IMG/VR virus record: IMGVR_UViG_3300046507_000667
Coordinates: 1-64,000 of that record
DNA: 64,000 nucleotides
Strand: one strand, 5' to 3'
Below, in pieces: positions 5,060 to 44,747 of the stretch (the first letter of the stretch is position 1; every line of letters starts with the position of its first letter). Position numbers and translations under genes: made by a program. The notes beneath the pieces are model-generated. The model did not search any database, had not been told where the DNA came from, and saw only the letters and a program-made list of their open reading frames with translations.

Positions 5060-5752
5060 ATGATCGAATTTTTAGATGAACCAAGGATTATGCGTCTGGA
5101 AGATCAGATGCTAATGAAGGATATGGCTGGTAGTAAGCGCACCAAAAACTTCATTGTAGTTCGTTCACCACGTACAGGTGAAATTCTTTGGACTAGACAC
5201 AATCTAGTAGTTAATGGTGGTCGTGAGTTTACACTCCGTAAGCTATTTAATATTCCTTATGCTGGTGAAACTGCAAGTCAACTTTGTAGTCGTAAGGTAG
5301 CATTCTTTGGTATTGGTTCAGGTGGCACTCCTGTAGCTGATCCATTTATGCCTATCGCTCCAACTCCAGCAGATTCAAAGCTAAATAATGAAGTAGCTTT
5401 CCGTTCAGCTACAACTACTGCTCCATTAACTGATACTGAATTAGGTCTATATAACGACCAACGTTCAGATGGTACTGGTGGCTTCTTATATTATAAGAAA
5501 GCCTTCACTGATATGGAGCTAGTACTAAATACTAATACTGATGAAGATTATGTCCATCTAACTCTTGATATTTCAGATTTAGATGCTCGTGGCGCACTTA
5601 TTAGTGAACTTGGATTATTCACCGCAATGAATAATTCTACTACAAATACATGGTCCAATTATCAACTATTTACTCGTATTACCTTCCAAACTGAACCAAT
5701 GTCAATTGACACTAGTAAAGGTTTGAATATCGATTACTACGTATATGCCTAA
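5060..5752 (+). CDS. tail collar/fibre attachment protein (DUF3751-like)
   Basis: FFGIGSGG...P..ADSKLNNEVAFR...ISELGLF pattern. Confidence 0.6.
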   Translation: MIEFLDEPRIMRLEDQMLMKDMAGSKRTKNFIVVRSPRTGEILWTRHNLVVNGGREFTLRKLFNIPYAGETASQLCSRKVAFFGIGSGGTPVADPFMPIAPTPADSKLNNEVAFRSATTTAPLTDTELGLYNDQRSDGTGGFLYYKKAFTDMELVLNTNTDEDYVHLTLDISDLDARGALISELGLFTAMNNSTTNTWSNYQLFTRITFQTEPMSIDTSKGLNIDYYVYA

Positions 5753-5759
5753 GTAAATA

Positions 5760-6480
5760 TAGTATTCTCATGGATATATTATTTTCATGATAATGTAATT
5801 CATAGAGAATACTAATAAATATGCAAACCGTATTATTGCAATATTTATGGATATATTATCTAAATGCACTTATGATGTTAATAAGAGCCTGAAGTACCGT
5901 ACTTAAGCTTAATGAATCACTAGAAAGCTTAAGATATATCCTATTATATTTACGATAAAGAAGCAAAGCTAATGCAATCACAAATCATTGATCTTAGCGA
6001 AGAACAGCAAGCACATACAGTTAATAGCCCGGAAGATGATCGCCGGGATGATGATTGGTGGCAAGCACTTCGTTAAAGATCTATTGATATATAAAAAAGA
6101 TTCATTAGTGTAGTAGGATATAGTAGGGTCTCCAGAGTATTGGAGTTATTTGGTTTGCGAGGACCAAAGTAGTAAAATGATTCCGATGCCACGGAGTCTC
6201 GTAGTTGCTGTATCTCTACGAAACTAAGATATTTGCCAACTGTAGTATATCCTTAGGGGTTTTATTGTAGTACCGAATCCTTCAATGGATTCAGGACCGG
6301 AAGTTTAGTAATACTAATAAATATAAGTGCGCCTGGATAGTCATAGGCAACTAATGGGAAGACTAGCTACATCGTAATTGATACATCGTAGACTAGCAAA
6401 AATGCTTTAAAGTGCAGGGTATATAGGAGTGATCTGTAGAAGTCACCCATATATCAAAAATAGCATTGTGTGGTAGACGT
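5760..6480 (+). ncRNA. candidate large structured non-coding RNA (~720 nt), family not recognised; strand inferred
   Basis: no ORF over 35 codons noticed; at least 12 stems plus long-range pairs 5911-18/6099-6106 and 5866-73/6323-30. Confidence 0.65.
5972..6076 (+). CDS. small ORF MQSQIIDLSEEQQAHTVNSPEDDRRDDDWWQALR (34 aa) inside the structured region
   Basis: ATG 5972 to TAA 6076, purine-rich AAAGAAG upstream. Confidence 0.35.
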   Translation: MQSQIIDLSEEQQAHTVNSPEDDRRDDDWWQALR

Positions 6481-6493
6481 GATCAAAATTTGG

Positions 6494-6522
6494 TCCTGAA
6501 GATCCTATATGGGTCTTCAGGA
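6494..6522. terminator. 12-bp stem hairpin (terminator or leader stem)
   Basis: TCCTGAAGATCC-TATAT-GGGTCTTCAGGA. Confidence 0.65.
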
Positions 6523-6562
6523 TTAATTCTGTTTGCTTCATTTTTTTTTTATAAGAGAAATT

Positions 6563-7978
6563 ATGGCTGATACTGATATCGAAAATCAAGAGAATACGGA
6601 TATCGCCACTGAAGAGCAACCTAAACCACCAAAAAGAATTGATCCAAAAGATCTTAATTCGGTATTTAGTTTGCTTGAATCCGATATTACAAAATCATTC
6701 TTGATGGAAATGTTTGCAGTAAATGGAGATGCTGATGATGCAATAGTACCTCCAAATACTCCTATCAAGATTGATCCAAAAGTAATTCCTGAAGGTAGTC
6801 CGATTACTCAGTTTAAGAATTACAAAGATTTGGTTGGTAAGGAAACTACCATCGGCCGGATCATAGTAAATTTATTCATTTTTGGTATTTATGTCCACTT
6901 TGCTAAAAAAGAAGGTGGCATTGCAGATTATCCACTATATCCATTAGTCAACTTTGTTGATGCAGCTTTTGATGCTAAGACAATGAAAAATGCTGACTCT
7001 AATATAGTTAAACTCTATATCAATAGTCAAATAGATCACCAAGTTCTAACTGATTATATTGATAGATTGCAGTGGTTAGGTTATACATCCGCTATCTTTA
7101 CTTTACCTAGTCTTGATCTTAAGACTATTGTACCTGATGAAGAAACTACAAGAGTCAAGAATAAGCTTATTGCAGATAACCGAGATGCTATTGAAAATAA
7201 AGACGTTCTTAAATTCACTGAAATTGAGAATAAGGTTCTTGATGTAGCATCAGAAGAGCTTACTAAAAAGGGTGCCACTGGTAAATTCATTTACGATAGT
7301 GGATATAATGGATCGTGGAGTAACAACTATAAAGTTACATCAGTTTTCCGTGGAGTTGCTACGAAGACTGCAGATCCAAATGCTTTTGAAATTTGCTTAT
7401 CTAACCTTACTGAAGGTGTATCTAAAGAAGATATTCCTGCCCATGCTGACTTGGCTGTTCAAGGTGCAGCAGGTCGTGCTATTGACACCCAAAAGGGTGG
7501 TTATCTAAATAAGATCTTTATTAATGCATTCTCTGGTGTAGTTGCAGATAAAGAAGGTTCTGATTGTGGATCAACTAGAACAATTGATGCCATTATCACT
7601 AACAAGAACTATGATAACTACAAGTTTAGGTATATCAAAGAGGGTAGTAAATTAGTTCGTCTAGACGATGATAATAAAGACAAATATCTTGGCAAAGTAA
7701 GCAAATTTAGAAGTCCGATGTTTTGTAAGACACAAAAAATTTGTAATCATTGCCTAGGTGATATGTTCTATGTGATGAAGATTGAAAATATTGGTATGCA
7801 CATTGCCCGTATTTCAACTCGAATCATGCTATTGTCAATGAAGGCATTCCACAATATGGCTCTTAAACCTACAGAGTTTAATCTAAATGACTATGTAGAA
7901 GAAGCATCTGTTAAGATTAAGCCTAGTAAGCCTATTACAGATTCTATCCCTAAACAAGATAGATTTGAATTAACTTAA
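6563..7978 (+). CDS. rpoC: phage multisubunit RNA polymerase beta' subunit, C-terminal part
   Basis: AIDTQKGGYL (bridge-helix-like), SDCGS, RSPMFC...ICNHCLG zinc site; virion vs non-virion enzyme not determinable. Confidence 0.9.
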   Translation: MADTDIENQENTDIATEEQPKPPKRIDPKDLNSVFSLLESDITKSFLMEMFAVNGDADDAIVPPNTPIKIDPKVIPEGSPITQFKNYKDLVGKETTIGRIIVNLFIFGIYVHFAKKEGGIADYPLYPLVNFVDAAFDAKTMKNADSNIVKLYINSQIDHQVLTDYIDRLQWLGYTSAIFTLPSLDLKTIVPDEETTRVKNKLIADNRDAIENKDVLKFTEIENKVLDVASEELTKKGATGKFIYDSGYNGSWSNNYKVTSVFRGVATKTADPNAFEICLSNLTEGVSKEDIPAHADLAVQGAAGRAIDTQKGGYLNKIFINAFSGVVADKEGSDCGSTRTIDAIITNKNYDNYKFRYIKEGSKLVRLDDDNKDKYLGKVSKFRSPMFCKTQKICNHCLGDMFYVMKIENIGMHIARISTRIMLLSMKAFHNMALKPTEFNLNDYVEEASVKIKPSKPITDSIPKQDRFELT

Positions 7979-7990
7979 AAAAAAAAATAA

Positions 7991-8020
7991 CCCCTATACC
8001 CCCGTCAAGGAGGTATAGGG
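7991..8020. terminator. bidirectional terminator, CCCTATACC family
   Basis: CCCTATACC...GGTATAGGG between convergent genes, A-tract on left. Confidence 0.85.
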
Positions 8021-8026
8021 AATTAT

Positions 8027-8458
8027 TTATTCTACACGATAACCTTGAAAGGTAATCTTAGTAGGTGCAATAAGATCTGCTTCAGTTAGAAGCTTTTTAA
8101 TATTCGATTCAAGAATTGGTCCGTGACTAGAATCCTTTACATTGATAGTAAAGTTGATGCTTGCCTTAGTCAGTAAATCGACATTCATCACACTATTAAA
8201 TAGTGTATGCATCATCTTAATGACATTAGGAATGATTCGTTCGTGACCTAATGCATATTCTCTAAAATGGATAGTTACCGATACTTTCCTATAAGTTTCT
8301 TTAGCTAGATGTAATGCAAAAGTACGAATTGCTTCCGCCTGACTATCTAATTCCATATTGATAGGAAGATCAAACATAAGAAACATACGGAAGTCTTCCA
8401 TAGCATCTTCAATATGAATGATAACACTATCTTTTGTCATATTTGGCATGATACCCAT
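8027..8458 (-). CDS. hypothetical protein
   Basis: 143-aa ORF in coupled minus-strand operon. Confidence 0.75.
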   Translation of the reverse strand: MGIMPNMTKDSVIIHIEDAMEDFRMFLMFDLPINMELDSQAEAIRTFALHLAKETYRKVSVTIHFREYALGHERIIPNVIKMMHTLFNSVMNVDLLTKASINFTINVKDSSHGPILESNIKKLLTEADLIAPTKITFQGYRVE

Positions 8459-11770: not shown

Positions 11771-12473
11771 TTATACTTCTTCTTCTTCACCTGAACCATC
11801 ATCCATACTTTCATCACCACCCATATCAGGTTGTGCATTAGCTGGATCATTAGTTTTGGTAATGGTTTCCTTTAATGATGCTTTAAGGAATGCTACCTTT
11901 TCAGTATCTACAAGTGCATTAAAGTCATCCCAATCAAAGTTGGTAATATACTTTTCTAGCATACCTTGTTTCAGTACACCAATAAATGCTTCATGCTGAT
12001 CATCAGGAATACCCTTAACCTTCAAGTTTTGTGTCAATGAATCAAGCAATGCAGAAACGTTATTAATCATTTCTGTAAGATTGGTCATATTCAAGCTTGA
12101 TGGTGATGGGAAAACGATACTGATATTATTTAGATCAAAATTAATGATATCTGCTGGATTATTCTTAGCTTCTTCACTTTGATCAGAACTATCACGTTCA
12201 TTTGATTTATACTCTAGATCATATAGACGACGTAAAAGTTTAGTATATCCTTCACCTAAAATACCTTGCTCAGAAATAATGTCTCGAATAAATCGACTAT
12301 TTTGCATTGAAAGAGTCTTTGCAAAATCAACATTCTCAACTTCTGTCAAATAGGATGAAGGAAGACCAATACCAGAAAAGATATTATTGCTTAACCAGTT
12401 TAAGAAATCATCATCAAGATTTTTAGCTGGCTGTGCATCAATATTCTCAAAAGTAACAGGCTTTTCACCATCT
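11771..12473 (-). CDS. portal protein, exon 2
   Basis: in frame with exon 1 after splicing (YYIPTI/DGEKP); spliced product 866 aa. Confidence 0.85.
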
Positions 12474-12695
12474 CTGGTGTAGTTTGTATGAATAGTTAAT
12501 TCATAATACTTATATTTTCATATAAGATCAGACTATATCTTTACCCTATAAATAGAGTATTTTCTGTTTCCATTTCACTTGAAATGTACATTATAGTCGT
12601 TGAACGTTCCTCTTAAGAGGCTTCGCTGCTGATCACCTTCATCATTACATGTTAAGGACTTCCAGCAATTAAGAAAATTTAACCACGACAGATGG

Positions 12696-13448
12696 TTATT
12701 TACCAAAAATTTCACTTAAACGTTCTTCAATATTTTCAGTATAGATGATACGATGTAAAGTAATTCCATTATCTTTACAAAAATTGTCTTTTACTGAATT
12801 ACGTTTAATACTTTCACTAAGATTATGGCCTGTAAATGCCTTAGATGTTTGAAAGTGCTGTTTACCATCGAATTCAATTAAGAAATATTCTGTATCCGAT
12901 ACATGTATTGCAAAATCAAAATAGAGTTTCCTATTTTTATCTGATTTACAATTATCAAAATAAACTTCAGTATCAAAAGAAATTCCATTATTTCTTAAAA
13001 ATTCTTCAATAGTTTTAACTCCTTTAGATACTTTAGGCAATTTACCCATATTACACTGTGGGCAACGCCTATTATCTAAAAATTTTATTGGAGCTACACT
13101 ATATTCATGGCCACATACATCGTGCCTAATTTTAATCTTAGTATCATTATTATAGTACTTCTCTAAAAAAGTATATTCAGAAGCATTTGGAAGCAATTTT
13201 ACTTGTTCTTCAAATTGCTCAGGTGTTTTTGCTCTGAGCTTATGAAGTTTCTTATACTTACAAGTAAAGCATCCACCTTTATTCTGAAGAAGGTCATTTG
13301 GACGAGACTCAAATTCATTACCACAAATAGTATGTCTAAATAAAATCTTGACATTATTTTTGATATATGTACCTAAAGCTTCGTACTCTGTACCCCACTT
13401 TTCTTTTAAAGTGTTGCAAAAATCTTCATGTGAAATTTTCTTTGGTAT
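12696..13448 (-). CDS. intron-encoded homing endonuclease (zinc-ribbon repeats + Vsr/DUF559-like PD-(D/E)XK domain); no in-frame ATG
   Basis: frame open from ATA 13448 (IPKKISHEDF): H..CG..F and CxxC repeats, C-terminal IEFDGKQHF; the 166-aa track ORF lacks the first repeat. Confidence 0.8.
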   Translation of the reverse strand: MPKKISHEDFCNTLKEKWGTEYEALGTYIKNNVKILFRHTICGNEFESRPNDLLQNKGGCFTCKYKKLHKLRAKTPEQFEEQVKLLPNASEYTFLEKYYNNDTKIKIRHDVCGHEYSVAPIKFLDNRRCPQCNMGKLPKVSKGVKTIEEFLRNNGISFDTEVYFDNCKSDKNRKLYFDFAIHVSDTEYFLIEFDGKQHFQTSKAFTGHNLSESIKRNSVKDNFCKDNGITLHRIIYTENIEERLSEIFGK

Positions 13449-43318: not shown

Positions 43319-44290
43319 ATGATTATGGCAAAAGCACTAACTCTAGCTGAATTTCAAGAAAGGATTTCAGCAAAATATGACAATGAGTATTCATTAATTT
43401 TCTTCAAAGCACTAGCAGTTAGAGCTCCTATCATTCTTAGACATAGTTGTGGACATGAATTTGAATCTACTTTTCAATCATTTGTAAATGATTCTAAAGG
43501 TAAATGCAAAGTATGCTATTTACAAACTAGTAAAGGAAGACAAAAAGCTCTTACTGAAGATGAGTTAATAAAAAGGCTTATTAATACTGAATATAACTAT
43601 ATATCAGGATTTATTAATACTAAGAAGAAAGCTTTATTTAGACATAGCTGCGGACATGAATTTGAATCTCTACCAAGAGATATTTATAGTAATAAGTCAG
43701 GCTGTCCAAAATGTGCTAATAAAAATAGAGGTAAATATCAAGTTAATAAAAATTATTTAGAATTACTACTATCTGTTGAAGATGGTAATGAATATAAATG
43801 GTTAGATAAGTTTAGGGATAATAAAACACTTACGCTTATTAAACACTTAACTTGCAATAATGAATATAAAGTTCGTCCAAATGATTTTCAACAAGGTTAT
43901 CGTTGTCCATTTTGTTCTGAAAAATTTCCTACAGAATCAAAAAGTGTTAAGCACATAATAAAACGTCTTACCGAATTAAATATTTCTTTCGCTAGAGAAT
44001 TTACTGATTCTAGATGTCGTTTTAAAAATGTGCTTAGATTTGATTTTGCTATTGATTTACCAGATAGCAGGAAACTTTTAATAGAATTTGATGGTAAATA
44101 ACATTTTCATCCCTTAATTAATGAAGATGTATTTGAACTTCAAATTGAAAGAGATTTAGTTAAGAATCAGTTTTGTAAAATATACTCTAAGGAGTATGTA
44201 TTAGAAAGAATTTCTTATAAAGAAAATGTAGAAGATAAATTAGTTGAAATATTATTAAAACACAATCTTGTAGAGTATTGCCGTCATTAA
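43319..44290 (+). pseudogene. intron homing endonuclease (3 zinc-ribbon repeats + Vsr/DUF559-like domain) with premature TAA at 44099-44101
   Basis: IEFDGK*HF versus IEFDGKQHF in the portal-intron paralog; frame continues 62 codons (RD..KNQFC...ERISY) to TAA 44290. Confidence 0.8.
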
Positions 44291-44475
44291 ACTCTCTTAA
44301 TTGCTGGAAACCCTTAAATGGCAATCAGCAGCGAATCTTTTTATGAAGAACGTTCAACGACTATTATGTACTTATCAAATGATAAGGAAACAGAGAGCAT
44401 CGAAAGATGAAGATATAGTCTGGTCTTATATGAAAATATAAGTATGATAGTGTAATAAACTATCGCAACACTAAG

Positions 44476-44634
44476 GATACATTCCGTATTATTGGCCTAT
44501 TCACTCAAGAAGCTAATGATGAAGCTAAAGGTATTATGGAATCACCATTAAATTTCATTGACCCATCAGGCAGTTTAATGCGTGGTGTAGGTCGTGAAGC
44601 AGGTCTAGCTTTATATATGCTTACAAAGAAATAA
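44476..44634 (+). CDS. rpoC: RNAP beta' N-terminal subunit, exon 2 (DTFRIIGLFTQEANDEAK...)
   Basis: supplies third Asp of DYDGD; 52 aa, below ORF-track cutoff. Confidence 0.9.
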   Translation, partial: DTFRIIGLFTQEANDEAKGIMESPLNFIDPSGSLMRGVGREAGLALYMLTKK

Positions 44635-44639
44635 AGATT

Positions 44640-44669
44640 TCCCTAACCTTCTGAAAAGAGGGTTAGGGA
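44640..44669 (+). terminator. terminator, CCCTAACC family
   Basis: TCCCTAACC...GGTTAGGGA. Confidence 0.8.
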
Positions 44670-44688
44670 GTATCTATAGCCTTCATGC

Positions 44689-44699
44689 AAATATATTAT
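44689..44699 (+). promoter_or_regulatory. early-type promoter AAATATATTAT
   Basis: exact motif. Confidence 0.65.
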
Positions 44700-44747
44700 A
44701 TTAGTGTAGGATTGTATAACACAAATTGATTATAATAGGATTAGATT

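What the first reader, a model, noticed from the sequence alone, without database searches (positions are those of the whole stretch)
5760..6522. ~720-nt ornate non-coding region: candidate undescribed large structured phage RNA
Seen: the only large gap (810 nt) in a densely coding genome is packed with helices: 5760-69/5805-14; 5849-56/5934-41 enclosing 5902-10/5925-33; 5990-6002/6068-81 enclosing 6028-32/6043-47; a multibranch domain closed by 6115-22/6246-53 with four hairpins (6130-34/6141-45, 6149-54/6163-68, 6179-85/6192-98, 6199-6204/6216-21); 6275-80/6287-92; 6401-06/6462-67 enclosing 6429-32/6443-46. Two long-range 8-bp complements suggest tertiary contacts: loop 5911-18 AATGAATC with 6099-6106, and 5866-73 GCACTTAT with 6323-30. 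G.U pairs fit + strand RNA better. Two early-promoter-like GGATATATTAT copies (5772, 5849) lie at the 5' end and a strong hairpin closes the 3' end. It lacks group I/II intron, tmRNA, RNase P and SRP signatures. Established: phages carry large RNAs of unknown function in this size range (GOLLD, ROOL). Inference: a new or highly diverged giant phage ncRNA beside an RNAP subunit gene.
Basis: partly seen in the sequence, partly recalled or inferred. Interest (0 to 1): 0.85.

Follow-up and report, generated by a model that had tools for sequence, protein, structure and literature searches.

The report
Early small-ORF transcript with long structured tail
The gap is most likely a conserved early phage transcription unit (promoter, tiny gene, terminator) that this lineage has enlarged with about 410 bases of hairpin-rich, gene-free RNA, and nothing yet shows that it is a new giant catalytic-style RNA.

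Summary
The helices, the two promoter-like repeats, the 3' hairpin and the absence of any Rfam match are all real. The interpretation as one ~720-nt ornate ncRNA is only partly supported.

Eleven other lineages of related jumbo phages (phiR1-37 group) have a 237-317-nt spacer at this position. It holds one virion-RNAP-type early promoter (TATATTAT-N6-G), a 5' hairpin, a 14-55-aa ORF (C-terminal D-W-W/F motif in 9 of the 11) and an intrinsic terminator just before the RNAP beta-like gene.

The window has the same unit: promoters with predicted starts G5789 and G5866, a 34-aa ORF at 5972-6076 (…DDWWQALR), and a terminator at 6490-6526. It adds a duplicated promoter and a 414-nt ORF-free segment (6077-6489).

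More than half of the fold-energy excess (z about -9) comes from the promoter-1 hairpin and the terminator. The 414-nt segment is no more structured than genome background, except for one long G.U-rich hairpin (6105-6229).

No homologue of the 3' segment exists in any collection searched, so covariation there is untestable. Its function remains open.

The parts
5060..5752 (+). Upstream context: virion structural gene, homologue of phiR1-37 g233.
   Evidence: PHROG 19418, E 1e-50; blastn match to phiR1-37 g233.
5760..5814 (+). Hairpin (24 bp, 3 G.U) whose 5' arm contains promoter copy 1. It is probably the 3' stem-loop of read-through RNA from the upstream late gene. Its 3' arm can alternatively pair with promoter copy 2 in RNA started at 5789.
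Evidence: Fold -21.5 (+) versus -11.8 (-) kcal/mol. The inner 14-17 bp are kept in the diverged lineage L016, with two double compensatory pairs (U-A to C-G, A-U to G-C) and three wobble-compatible changes.
5772..5789 (+). Early (virion-RNAP type) promoter copy 1, GGATATATTAT-N6-G; predicted start G5789. It is the positional homologue of the single promoter in relatives.
   Evidence: consensus from PMC5312081; conserved in L016.
5849..5866 (+). Early promoter copy 2, 77 nt downstream of copy 1; predicted start G5866.
   Evidence: The copy and the exact 77-nt spacing are conserved in L016.
5866..5888 (+). Weakly predicted 5'-terminal stem-loop of the copy-2 transcript.
   Evidence: Present in the MFE of the isolated 5' segment but ensemble probability only about 0.05 in the full transcript. 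Most relatives' MFE folds show a hairpin at or near +1.
5902..5933 (+). 9-bp palindromic hairpin in the 5' UTR (D1).
   Evidence: Pair probability 0.98. L016 has a hairpin of similar size at the same place built from a different sequence, but the alignment is ambiguous.
5972..6076 (+). 34-aa small ORF (MQSQ…DDDWWQALR), homologue of phiR1-37 g232. It lies inside a predicted long hairpin (5984-6088).
   Evidence: Same position and the same C-terminal [D]-W-[W/F] motif in 10 of 12 lineages. Called by the JGI gene caller. The only strain SNP in it, 6025 T>C, is synonymous and turns a predicted G.U into G-C. Hairpin probability 0.83-1.0.
6077..6489 (+). 414-nt ORF-free, relatively GC-rich 3' segment that is absent from all relatives examined.
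   Evidence: No ORF above 25 aa with an ATG start. None of the ten stop-free pieces searched per library (27-59 aa) gives a significant Pfam or PHROG hit. GC is 0.39, the highest 400-nt window in the first 16 kb. z is -3.6 on both strands, not an outlier against background. No homologue in any collection.
6105..6229 (+). Long irregular hairpin D3: 45 pairs, 9 of them G.U, capped by a GCGA tetraloop at 6157-6160. It is the one outstanding element of the 3' segment.
   Evidence: -47.7 kcal/mol on + versus -25.7 on -. It is the third most stable of about 8000 125-nt windows on the + strand and has the second strongest + strand bias in the window. z -4.7 in 200 shuffles. Helix probabilities 0.73-1.0. 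SNP 6172 G>A falls in its 9-nt bulge.
6275..6292 (+). Small hairpin D4 (6 bp).
   Evidence: Probability 1.0.
6401..6467 (+). Hairpin D6, formed by 6401-06/6462-67, 6418-24/6449-55 and 6429-32/6443-46.
   Evidence: Probabilities 0.77-0.99.
6490..6550 (+). Intrinsic terminator: 16-bp stem-loop 6490-6526 followed by a T-rich tract with a T10 run at 6541-6550, directly before the RBS of the RNAP gene.
   Evidence: z -6.9. Every relative has a stem-loop plus a T5-12 run or T-rich tract at the same place.
6563..7978 (+). Downstream context: RNAP beta-like subunit gene, homologue of phiR1-37 g231 (virion RNAP).
   Evidence: PHROG 2962, E 1e-70.
5808..5822 (.). First copy of an exact 15-nt direct repeat, AATACTAATAAATAT. 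The second copy is at 6310-6324, 502 nt away. Unexplained.
   Evidence: Copy 1 is not conserved in L016 and copy 2 carries a strain SNP at 6311.

Best explanation
The interval is a conserved early transcription unit of phiR1-37-like jumbo phages that has been enlarged in this lineage. It is not a single giant ncRNA gene.

**Shown by comparison**
- In eleven other lineages the spacer between the g233-like structural gene and the virion-RNAP beta-like gene is 237-317 nt.
- That spacer holds one virion-RNAP-type early promoter (TATATTAT-N6-G), usually a hairpin near the transcript start, a 14-55-aa ORF that in 9 of the 11 carries a D-W-W/F motif near its end, and an intrinsic terminator with a long T run just before the RNAP gene.
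- The window has all of these parts: promoter copy 1 (start G5789), the ORF at 5972-6076, and the terminator at 6490-6550.
- It has three additions: a second promoter copy 77 nt downstream (start G5866) together with a complementary arm; a small 5'-UTR hairpin; and a 414-nt ORF-free segment (6077-6489) between the ORF's stop codon and the terminator.

**Inferred**
- The injected virion RNAP makes + strand RNAs of about 680 and 760 nt early in infection.
- The small ORF is translated.
- The 3' segment travels as a long 3' UTR. Its dominant element is a 125-nt G.U-rich hairpin (6105-6229).
- Together with the terminator stem, that hairpin most likely acts in cis on RNA stability or processing, for example as a double-strand-specific RNase (RNase III-type) site.
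- The terminator insulates the RNAP gene, or lets through a regulated fraction of transcripts.
For: - Synteny and spacer anatomy were read in relatives L001, L009, L011-L015 and L041-L044.
- The promoter consensus comes from AR9, phiKZ and phiR1-37 (PMC5312081). The motif is enriched 12 versus 2.2 in the window, and 7 of the other 10 copies lie 23-141 nt upstream of an ORF of at least 98 aa.
- The small-ORF motif is present in 10 of 12 lineages. The ORF was called by the JGI gene caller, and its only strain SNP is synonymous.
- The terminator is detected and is syntenic in all relatives.
- Both promoters, their 77-nt spacing and the promoter-1 hairpin are conserved in lineage L016, which is 31% diverged at four-fold sites. 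The hairpin keeps its pairing through two compensatory pairs.
- Every major hairpin shows a + strand bias.
- D3 ranks in the top 0.1% for stability.
- Short promoter-to-terminator units upstream of structural genes are documented in giant phage 201phi2-1 (PMC11512511).
Against: - No transcript data exist for this phage.
- In phiR1-37 RNA-seq, no reads mapped to g232 and the spacer promoter is listed as unverified (PMC4848604). A ~230-nt RNA could have been lost in library preparation.
- Both promoter copies read GGATATATTAT, whereas the other copies of the motif in the window mostly read AAATATATTAT. Virion RNAP is said to be sensitive to deviations from consensus.
- The conserved D-W-W always uses GAT TGG TGG, so a nucleotide-level motif cannot be excluded.
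- The 414-nt segment is no more structured than genome background and shows no strand bias as a whole. A cis RNA role is therefore inferred from D3 alone.
Confidence: 0.6

Rival explanations
1. One reading: the whole 5760-6522 interval is one large, ornate, tertiary-folded ncRNA of a new family, comparable to GOLLD or ROOL.
For: - It is the largest ORF-free gap in the window.
- Whole-interval fold z is -9 and about 4 SD beyond genome background on the + strand only.
- Inverted 8-mers are enriched.
- The other two ORF-free gaps are structured RNAs, both group I introns.
Against: - The interval contains a conserved small ORF and promoter DNA.
- More than half of the energy excess comes from a promoter hairpin and a terminator.
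- The multibranch fold is 18 kcal/mol worse than a simple hairpin.
- The proposed tertiary pairs are at chance level.
- It is absent from all relatives with 42-51% identical RNAP beta.
- No Rfam match appears even at E 10.
Confidence: 0.08
2. The 414-nt 3' segment, or at least hairpin D3, is a lineage-specific functional RNA domain acting in trans or on the polymerase. Examples would be a decoy for a host nuclease or defence protein, or a put-like antitermination element that lets early transcription read into the RNAP gene.
For: - D3 is in the top 0.1% for stability, has 9 G.U pairs and a GNRA loop, and shows strong + strand bias.
- GC is enriched relative to the relatives' spacers.
- The three strain SNPs in the transcribed interval (one in the small ORF, two in this segment) spare all predicted helices.
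- It lies between an early promoter and a terminator that precedes a gene.
Against: - The segment as a whole is at background level for structure.
- There are no homologues and therefore no covariation.
- Relatives manage without it.
- Three SNPs are too few to show constraint.
Confidence: 0.2
3. The extra 414 nt is a functionless remnant of inserted DNA, such as a decayed gene or mobile element, whose hairpins are incidental.
For: - This spacer accepts insertions: L044 carries a 143-aa ORF with a ParB-like DGFHR motif (recognised by eye, not searched) at the same junction.
- Its GC differs from surrounding spacer DNA.
- A 15-nt exact direct repeat lies 502 nt apart.
- Structure is at background level.
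Against: - Every reading frame has 13 or more stops and no searched piece matches Pfam or PHROGs.
- There is no second copy in the window or, for the patterns scanned, in the 249-kb contig.
- D3's G.U-rich strand bias is not expected from decayed coding DNA.
- The direct repeat is not conserved in L016.
Confidence: 0.2
4. The interval acts as DNA, for example as a replication origin, a packaging site or a cluster of protein-binding sites built on the repeated GGATATA motif.
For: GGATATA-like motifs recur in both orientations at 5772, 5849, 5934, 6115 and 6246. Inverted repeats are enriched.
Against: - There are no iterons.
- The interval is GC-rich rather than AT-rich, and no gene-orientation switch occurs there.
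- Hairpins rely on G.U pairs that are A-C mismatches on the other strand.
- The 8-mer GGATATAT is not enriched window-wide: 6 observed versus 3.7 expected.
Confidence: 0.05

Closest known systems
phiR1-37 g232 unit: the spacer between g233 and the RNAP beta-subunit gene g231
   Same: Same flanking genes. Same promoter motif directly after the structural gene's stop codon. A small ORF with a W-containing C-terminal motif. An intrinsic terminator plus T run before the RNAP gene.
   Different: phiR1-37 has 284 nt, one promoter and 48 nt between the stop codon and the terminator. The window has 810 nt, two promoters and 414 nt between stop and terminator. In phiR1-37, g232 had no RNA-seq reads.
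Virion-RNAP early promoters of phiKZ-like phages (AR9 AAATATATATTAT-N6-G+1; phiKZ; phiR1-37)
   Same: TATATTAT, a 6-nt spacer, then G at +1. AT-rich context. The motif is enriched upstream of genes in this window.
   Different: Both copies in the interval begin GG rather than AA. Their activity is untested.
Premature-termination (5'UTR-derived) sRNAs of giant phages such as 201phi2-1 sRNA005 and the phiKZ gp182 upstream sRNA
   Same: A promoter followed shortly by a terminator directly upstream of a structural gene, at a position conserved among related giant phages (PMC11512511).
   Different: Those RNAs are under 250 nt and are described as non-coding. Here the unit is 680-760 nt and carries a conserved small ORF. 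No sequence relationship was tested.
Large bacterial and phage ncRNAs GOLLD, ROOL, HEARO and OLE
   Same: Size range, and in some cases location in phages.
   Different: No covariance-model match even at E 10. No multi-branch core is supported. No family of homologues exists.
Group I introns of this same phage (12509-12752, 44243-44442, and the RNAP-gene intron of strain L004)
   Same: An ORF-poor, structured gap in the same genome, next to or inside the RNAP gene.
   Different: No RF00028 match in the interval. No sequence similarity to the three introns. The flanking genes are separate genes in all relatives, so nothing is interrupted.
RNase III processing hairpins of phage early transcripts (T7 R sites, lambda sib); recalled from general knowledge
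   Same: Long imperfect hairpins with internal loops in early mRNAs, which leave a protective 3' stem.
   Different: This is purely an analogy for D3. No cleavage data exist and no sequence model was tested.

Membership tests
Rfam large ncRNAs (GOLLD, ROOL, HEARO, OLE, RNase P, tmRNA, SRP) | Match to the family covariance model at or above its gathering score | tested here: not met
   cmscan of the whole window at gathering threshold, and of 5600-6700 at E<=10, gave only three chance-level snoRNA/sRNA hits below threshold. ARAGORN found no tRNA or tmRNA.
Group I intron | RF00028 core (P3-P8, P7 G-binding site) | tested here: not met
   No hit in the interval at E<=10. The same model scores 81-90 bits on three other sites in this phage population.
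Group I intron | Interrupts a gene whose exons are contiguous in intron-less relatives | tested here: not met
   The flanking genes are two separate, complete genes in the 10 of 11 other lineages whose contigs reach the structural gene.
phiKZ-like virion-RNAP early promoter | AT-rich consensus …TATATTAT, a 6-nt spacer, G at +1 | tested here: met
   5775-5789 and 5852-5866 match exactly. The motif occurs 12 times versus 2.2 expected. The consensus is from PMC5312081.
phiKZ-like virion-RNAP early promoter | Transcription start observed early and independent of protein synthesis | not testable with these tools
   No transcriptome exists for this uncultured phage. The homologous promoter in phiR1-37 is listed as unverified.
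Intrinsic terminator | GC-containing stem-loop followed by a U tract | tested here: met
   16-bp stem at 6490-6526 with a T-rich tail and a T10 run. It is syntenic with the terminators of all relatives.
g232-type small ORF of phiR1-37-like phages | Position between the g233 and g231 homologues, downstream of the spacer promoter, on the same strand | tested here: met
   5972-6076, 106 nt after the predicted start G5866.
g232-type small ORF of phiR1-37-like phages | C-terminal [D]-W-[W/F] motif | tested here: met
   The window has DDWWQALR. The motif is present in 10 of 12 lineages.
g232-type small ORF of phiR1-37-like phages | Evidence of translation or coding-type selection | tested here: inconclusive
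   One synonymous strain SNP. Purine-rich, RBS-like sequences were seen upstream of the ORF in several lineages. The motif codons are invariant, so coding and nucleotide-level constraint cannot be separated.
Structured functional RNA (generic criteria) | Folding energy beyond both shuffles and genome background | tested here: inconclusive
   Met for the whole interval (about 4 SD) and for D3. Not met for 5866-6076 or for 6077-6489 as a whole.
Structured functional RNA (generic criteria) | Covariation across homologues | tested here: inconclusive
Testable only for 5753-5968, against the single lineage L016. For 5969-6562 no diverged homologue could be retrieved.

The most novel reading that the evidence does not exclude
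The 414-nt 3' segment, centred on the 125-nt G.U-rich GNRA-capped hairpin 6105-6229, is a new phage RNA element. It would be made in the first minutes of infection by the injected virion RNAP, fused to a conserved micro-ORF mRNA. It would act beyond simple mRNA stabilisation, for example as a decoy for a host nuclease or defence sensor, or as a cis antiterminator that controls early read-through into the virion-RNAP beta gene.
Probability: 0.2. Interest if true: 0.55.

Novelty: new variant of a known kind. Interest (0 to 1): 0.3.

Why it matters
If the unit is expressed as predicted, it defines a conserved early micro-ORF (D-W-W motif) cassette. That cassette sits directly in front of the virion-RNAP beta gene across a whole clade of phiR1-37-like jumbo phages, and in phiR1-37 it is annotated only as a hypothetical protein. 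One lineage has grafted a long structured tail onto it.

This gives a concrete, small target for asking how jumbo phages time or insulate expression of their own polymerase genes, and what their tiny early peptides do.

It also cautions about z-scores against shuffles. In this genome they overstate structure, because ordinary coding DNA already scores about -2 to -3.

Tried and rejected
**Known RNA families.** Rfam at gathering and permissive thresholds, and ARAGORN, found nothing in the interval.

**Decayed gene.** All six frames have 13-25 stops. Ten stop-free pieces of 27-59 aa, searched separately against Pfam and against PHROGs, gave no significant hit. tblastn with the 143-aa protein inserted at this junction in L044 gave nothing.

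**Link to this phage's group I introns.** There is no similarity.

**Repeat or mobile element.** No second copy exists in the window, and the scanned patterns occur once per contig. This also argues against a template/variable-repeat pair.

**Homologue hunt**
- blastn against GenBank phages (E<=10) and plasmids gave only chance hits.
- Four IMG/VR pattern scans, one metagenome scan and one GTDB scan returned only the three near-identical contigs plus chance matches, as verified by blastn.
- The metagenome collection evidently lacks the relevant samples.
- The protein route showed no RNAP beta relatives between 51% and 100% identity.
- A search with the N-terminal 160 aa found nothing.
- Only L016, a 1105-nt contig that ends at window position 5968, came out of this.

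**Origin of replication.** There are no iterons, the DNA is GC-rich, and there is no orientation switch.

**Technical note.** A first attempt at the genome-wide 810-nt background timed out and was repeated at a smaller scale.
Full report
**Where we are.** The window is the first 64 kb of IMG/VR contig UViG_3300046507_000667, a 249-kb contig. It comes from a jumbo phage distantly related to Yersinia phage phiR1-37. The finding covers the 810-nt gap 5753-6562. Upstream is a virion structural gene (5060-5752; PHROG 19418; phiR1-37 g233 homologue). Downstream is an RNAP beta-like subunit gene (6563-7978; PHROG 2962; g231 homologue).

**Checking the observation: what holds.**
- GGATATATTAT occurs only at 5772 and 5849 in the window; 0.12 copies are expected by chance.
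- A 16-bp stem-loop with a T-rich tail closes the interval at 6490-6526.
- Rfam finds nothing in the interval at gathering score, and only three chance-level hits at E<=10. ARAGORN finds nothing.
- The whole interval folds to -238.4 kcal/mol on the + strand (shuffles -179, z -9.0) and -186.3 on the - strand (z -5.6).
- Inverted 8-mers are three-fold enriched.

**Checking the observation: what needs qualifying.**
- The gap is the largest but not the only ORF-free one. With ORFs of 50 aa or more, two other gaps remain (12350-12695 and 44102-44747), and both hold group I introns.
- Shuffles are a lenient null in this genome. Thirty-two ordinary 810-nt windows beat their own shuffles by 19.5 +/- 9.4 kcal/mol, with z values from -0.7 to -5.5.
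- Against that background the interval's -59 kcal/mol excess is about 4 SD on the + strand and about 1.4 SD on the - strand. It is real and strand-specific, but less extreme than z -9 suggests.

**Where the structure sits.** Partitioning the interval gives:

| Segment | z | Excess (kcal/mol) |
|---|---|---|
| 5753-5865 | -5.5 | -14.8 |
| 5866-6076 | -1.2 | -4.7 |
| 6077-6489 | -3.6 | -16.9 (the - strand gives -17.6) |
| 6490-6562 | -6.9 | -15.1 |

- For 413-nt background windows the excess is -11.0 +/- 6.7, and 9 of 36 are as extreme as 6077-6489. About half of the signal therefore comes from two end hairpins, and the long middle is unexceptional as a whole.
- A single long-range perfect 8-mer complement is expected about 7.5 times by chance here. 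The two proposed tertiary contacts therefore carry no weight on their own.
- One of those contacts (5866-5873) also overlaps a weakly predicted local hairpin at the transcript's 5' end.
- One element does stand out: the long irregular hairpin 6105-6229. It has 45 pairs, 9 of them G.U, and a GCGA tetraloop. It folds to -47.7 kcal/mol on the + strand against -25.7 on the - strand.
- That hairpin is the third most stable of about 8000 125-nt windows on the + strand. It has the second strongest + strand bias in the window, although part of this reflects G+T richness; the residual z is -2.6. Its shuffle z is -4.7.

**What relatives show.**
- The RNAP beta-like protein has no database relatives between 51% and 100% identity. 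I fetched the locus from eleven other lineages with 42-51% identity: phiR1-37 (L001), L009, L011-L015 and L041-L044.
- Synteny is conserved, and the spacer is only 237-317 nt wherever the contig reaches the structural gene (10 of the 11; L042's contig starts inside the spacer).
- Each spacer contains one TATATTAT-like motif followed 6 nt later by G, placed just after the structural gene's stop codon. Most MFE folds show a hairpin at or near the predicted +1.
- Each also contains a 14-55-aa ORF, then a strong stem-loop with a T5-12 run or T-rich tract directly before the RNAP gene's RBS.
- In 10 of 12 lineages, counting the window, the small ORF carries a [D]-W-[W/F] motif a few residues before its end:

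| Lineage | Motif |
|---|---|
| window | DDWWQ |
| L044 | DDWWT |
| L043 | CDWWD |
| L013 | FDWWL |
| L015 | NDWWS |
| L011 | IDWWD |
| L041 | VWWW |
| L009 | VDWFD |
| phiR1-37 g232 | SWFD |
| L012 | FDWAE |

- The window's 34-aa ORF at 5972-6076 is therefore the homologue of phiR1-37 g232. The JGI gene caller also called it. Part of the "non-coding" interval is a conserved micro-gene.

**The promoters.**
- Published work on AR9, phiKZ and phiR1-37 defines virion-RNAP early promoters as an AT-rich block ending …TATATTAT with the start site 6 nt downstream, G in AR9 (PMC5312081).
- TATATTAT-N6-G occurs 12 times in the window against 2.2 expected. Seven of the other ten copies lie 23-141 nt upstream of an ORF of at least 98 aa. 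One copy lies after a group I intron, upstream of a 98-aa ORF.
- Both copies in the interval fit the motif, predicting starts at G5789 and G5866.
- Caveats: both copies begin GG where the other copies of the motif in the window mostly have AA. In phiR1-37 the homologous promoter is listed as unverified and g232 had no RNA-seq reads (PMC4848604). A ~230-nt RNA could have escaped that library.

**A diverged lineage for the 5' part.**
- The 90% cluster of the structural protein held one variant, on a 1105-nt JGI contig (L016). Its protein is 90.5% identical and its four-fold sites are 31% diverged.
- The contig reaches window position 5968. Non-coding identity is 77% plus indels, with perfectly conserved blocks at both promoters, at TGCAAACCGTA, and at ATATCCTATTA-ATTTACGATAAAGAAGCAA just before the small ORF.
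- Both promoter copies and their exact 77-nt spacing are kept.
- The hairpin whose 5' arm contains promoter 1 is kept through two double compensatory changes (U-A to C-G, A-U to G-C) and three wobble-compatible changes.
- Because that hairpin lies upstream of both predicted starts, it can only form in RNA reading through from the late structural gene. Its 3' arm can instead pair with promoter copy 2 in RNA started at 5789, in both lineages.
- The 5'-UTR hairpin 5902-5933 is replaced in L016 by a hairpin of similar size built from different sequence, but the alignment there is ambiguous.
- The 5' 216 nt are thus a conserved arrangement of a late-gene 3' hairpin, tandem early promoters and a 5' UTR.

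**The 3' 414 nt.**
- In relatives the stop codon is about 5-50 nt from the terminator. Here 414 nt intervene (6077-6489).
- The segment has no ATG ORF above 25 aa and 13-25 stops in every frame across the interval.
- Ten stop-free pieces per library, searched separately against Pfam and PHROGs, gave no significant match.
- It shows no similarity to this phage's introns, and no second copy exists in the window.
- I found no homologue in GenBank phages, plasmids, IMG/VR, the JGI metagenome collection or GTDB genomes. Every extra match was a chance k-mer hit, as verified by blastn.
- Its GC content (0.39) is the highest 400-nt value in the first 16 kb and exceeds the relatives' spacers (0.24-0.38).
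- Among the three near-identical strains only two substitutions fall in it (6172 and 6311), both in predicted unpaired positions. A third SNP, 6025 in the ORF, is synonymous and converts a predicted G.U to G-C. This is consistent with structure but far too little to prove it.
- An exact 15-nt direct repeat (5808-5822 and 6310-6324) is unexplained. Its first copy is not conserved in L016.

**Most likely mechanism.**
- Shown: the promoter motif, small ORF and terminator are conserved, syntenic parts of one + strand unit in front of the virion-RNAP beta gene.
- Inferred: the injected virion RNAP starts at G5789 and G5866 and stops at the terminator, giving RNAs of about 760 and 680 nt. The micro-ORF is translated.
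- Inferred: the 414-nt tail is a 3' UTR whose long hairpin and terminator stem protect or direct processing of the RNA. The terminator insulates the RNAP gene or passes a regulated fraction of transcripts.
- Short promoter-to-terminator units directly upstream of structural genes, conserved by position among giant phages, have been reported as 5'UTR-derived sRNAs in 201phi2-1 and phiKZ (PMC11512511). The relatives' ~200-260-nt units resemble these.
- A speculative extension: tandem Trp codons followed by a terminator recall leader-peptide attenuation. The stop-to-terminator distance varies widely, however, and here it is 414 nt.

**Rivals.**
- A functional trans-acting or antiterminating RNA domain in the tail remains possible, at about 0.2. 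It rests mainly on hairpin 6105-6229.
- A functionless insertion remnant is about equally likely. The junction accepts insertions: L044 carries a 143-aa ORF with a ParB-like DGFHR motif there, recognised by eye and not searched.
- A DNA-level role is unlikely, given no iterons, the GC richness and the G.U dependence of the hairpins.

**Novelty and score.**
- Nothing here belongs to a described RNA family.
- The conserved unit is a known kind of thing (an early promoter-to-terminator cassette with a micro-ORF). The window holds an enlarged variant of it.
- The ORF-free tail is unique to this lineage, and covariation cannot be assessed with the available data.
- Interest is modest at 0.3. It would rise if a diverged copy showed compensatory changes in the tail.

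Noticed in passing
window 12509-12752 (-) and 44243-44442 (+): Two group I introns (RF00028, 84.5 and 81.1 bits) occupy the other two ORF-free gaps of the window. An early-promoter motif at 44692-44706 sits about 250 nt downstream of the second intron's Rfam match, inside the same ORF-free gap and 42 nt upstream of a 98-aa ORF. This recalls the intron-borne early gene of AR9.
   Followed up: partly
L004 4760-4985, inserted between window 7321 and 7322: A near-identical strain (IMG/VR 3300046457_000278) carries a 226-nt ORF-less group I intron (89.6 bits) inside the RNAP beta-like gene, which the window's strain lacks. Three third-codon-position substitutions directly flank the insertion site (7324, 7327, 7330), as in a co-conversion tract.
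   Followed up: partly
window 5972-6076; L001 6630-6725; L009 2849-2938; L011 2790; L012 2811; L013 2372; L015 2854; L041 1852; L043 1863; L044 1809: A family of 20-55-aa ORFs with a C-terminal D-W-W/F motif, often followed by an acidic tail, is conserved directly upstream of the virion-RNAP beta gene in 10 of 12 phiR1-37-like lineages. In phiR1-37 it is annotated only as a hypothetical protein (g232).
   Followed up: partly
window 5808-5822 and 6310-6324: An exact 15-nt direct repeat, AATACTAATAAATAT, lies 502 nt apart. Removing one copy plus the intervening DNA would leave a 308-nt spacer, the size seen in relatives. However, the small ORF lies inside that stretch, and copy 1 is not conserved in L016.
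   Followed up: partly
L044 1254-1685: One relative has a 143-aa ORF inserted between the structural gene and the spacer, carrying a ParB-like DGFHR motif (recognised by eye, not searched). This junction therefore tolerates insertions.
   Followed up: no
window 5772 and 5849, compared with the other TATATTAT-N6-G sites (11250, 34893, 39144, 44692 and others): The spacer promoter reads (G)GATATATTAT in the window and G/A-GATAT… in most relatives, whereas the other copies of the motif in the window mostly read AAATATATTAT. This may be a sub-class of promoter specific to this unit.
   Followed up: no
window 7991-8021: A strong 13-bp stem-loop lies between the convergent RNAP gene and the gene at 8027-8458. 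Both strands fold with z of -5.6 to -7.0, so it is a likely bidirectional terminator.
   Followed up: no
L009 6601-6885 (-): The 51%-identity relative encodes a 94-aa protein with an Acb2/Tad1 hairpin domain (anti-CBASS/anti-Thoeris sponge family) a few kb downstream of the RNAP gene.
   Followed up: no
whole window, 810-nt and 413-nt windows: Ordinary, mostly coding DNA of this phage folds 11-20 kcal/mol better than its dinucleotide shuffles (mean z about -2.4 to -3.3). Shuffle-based z-scores therefore overstate structure in this genome.
   Followed up: yes
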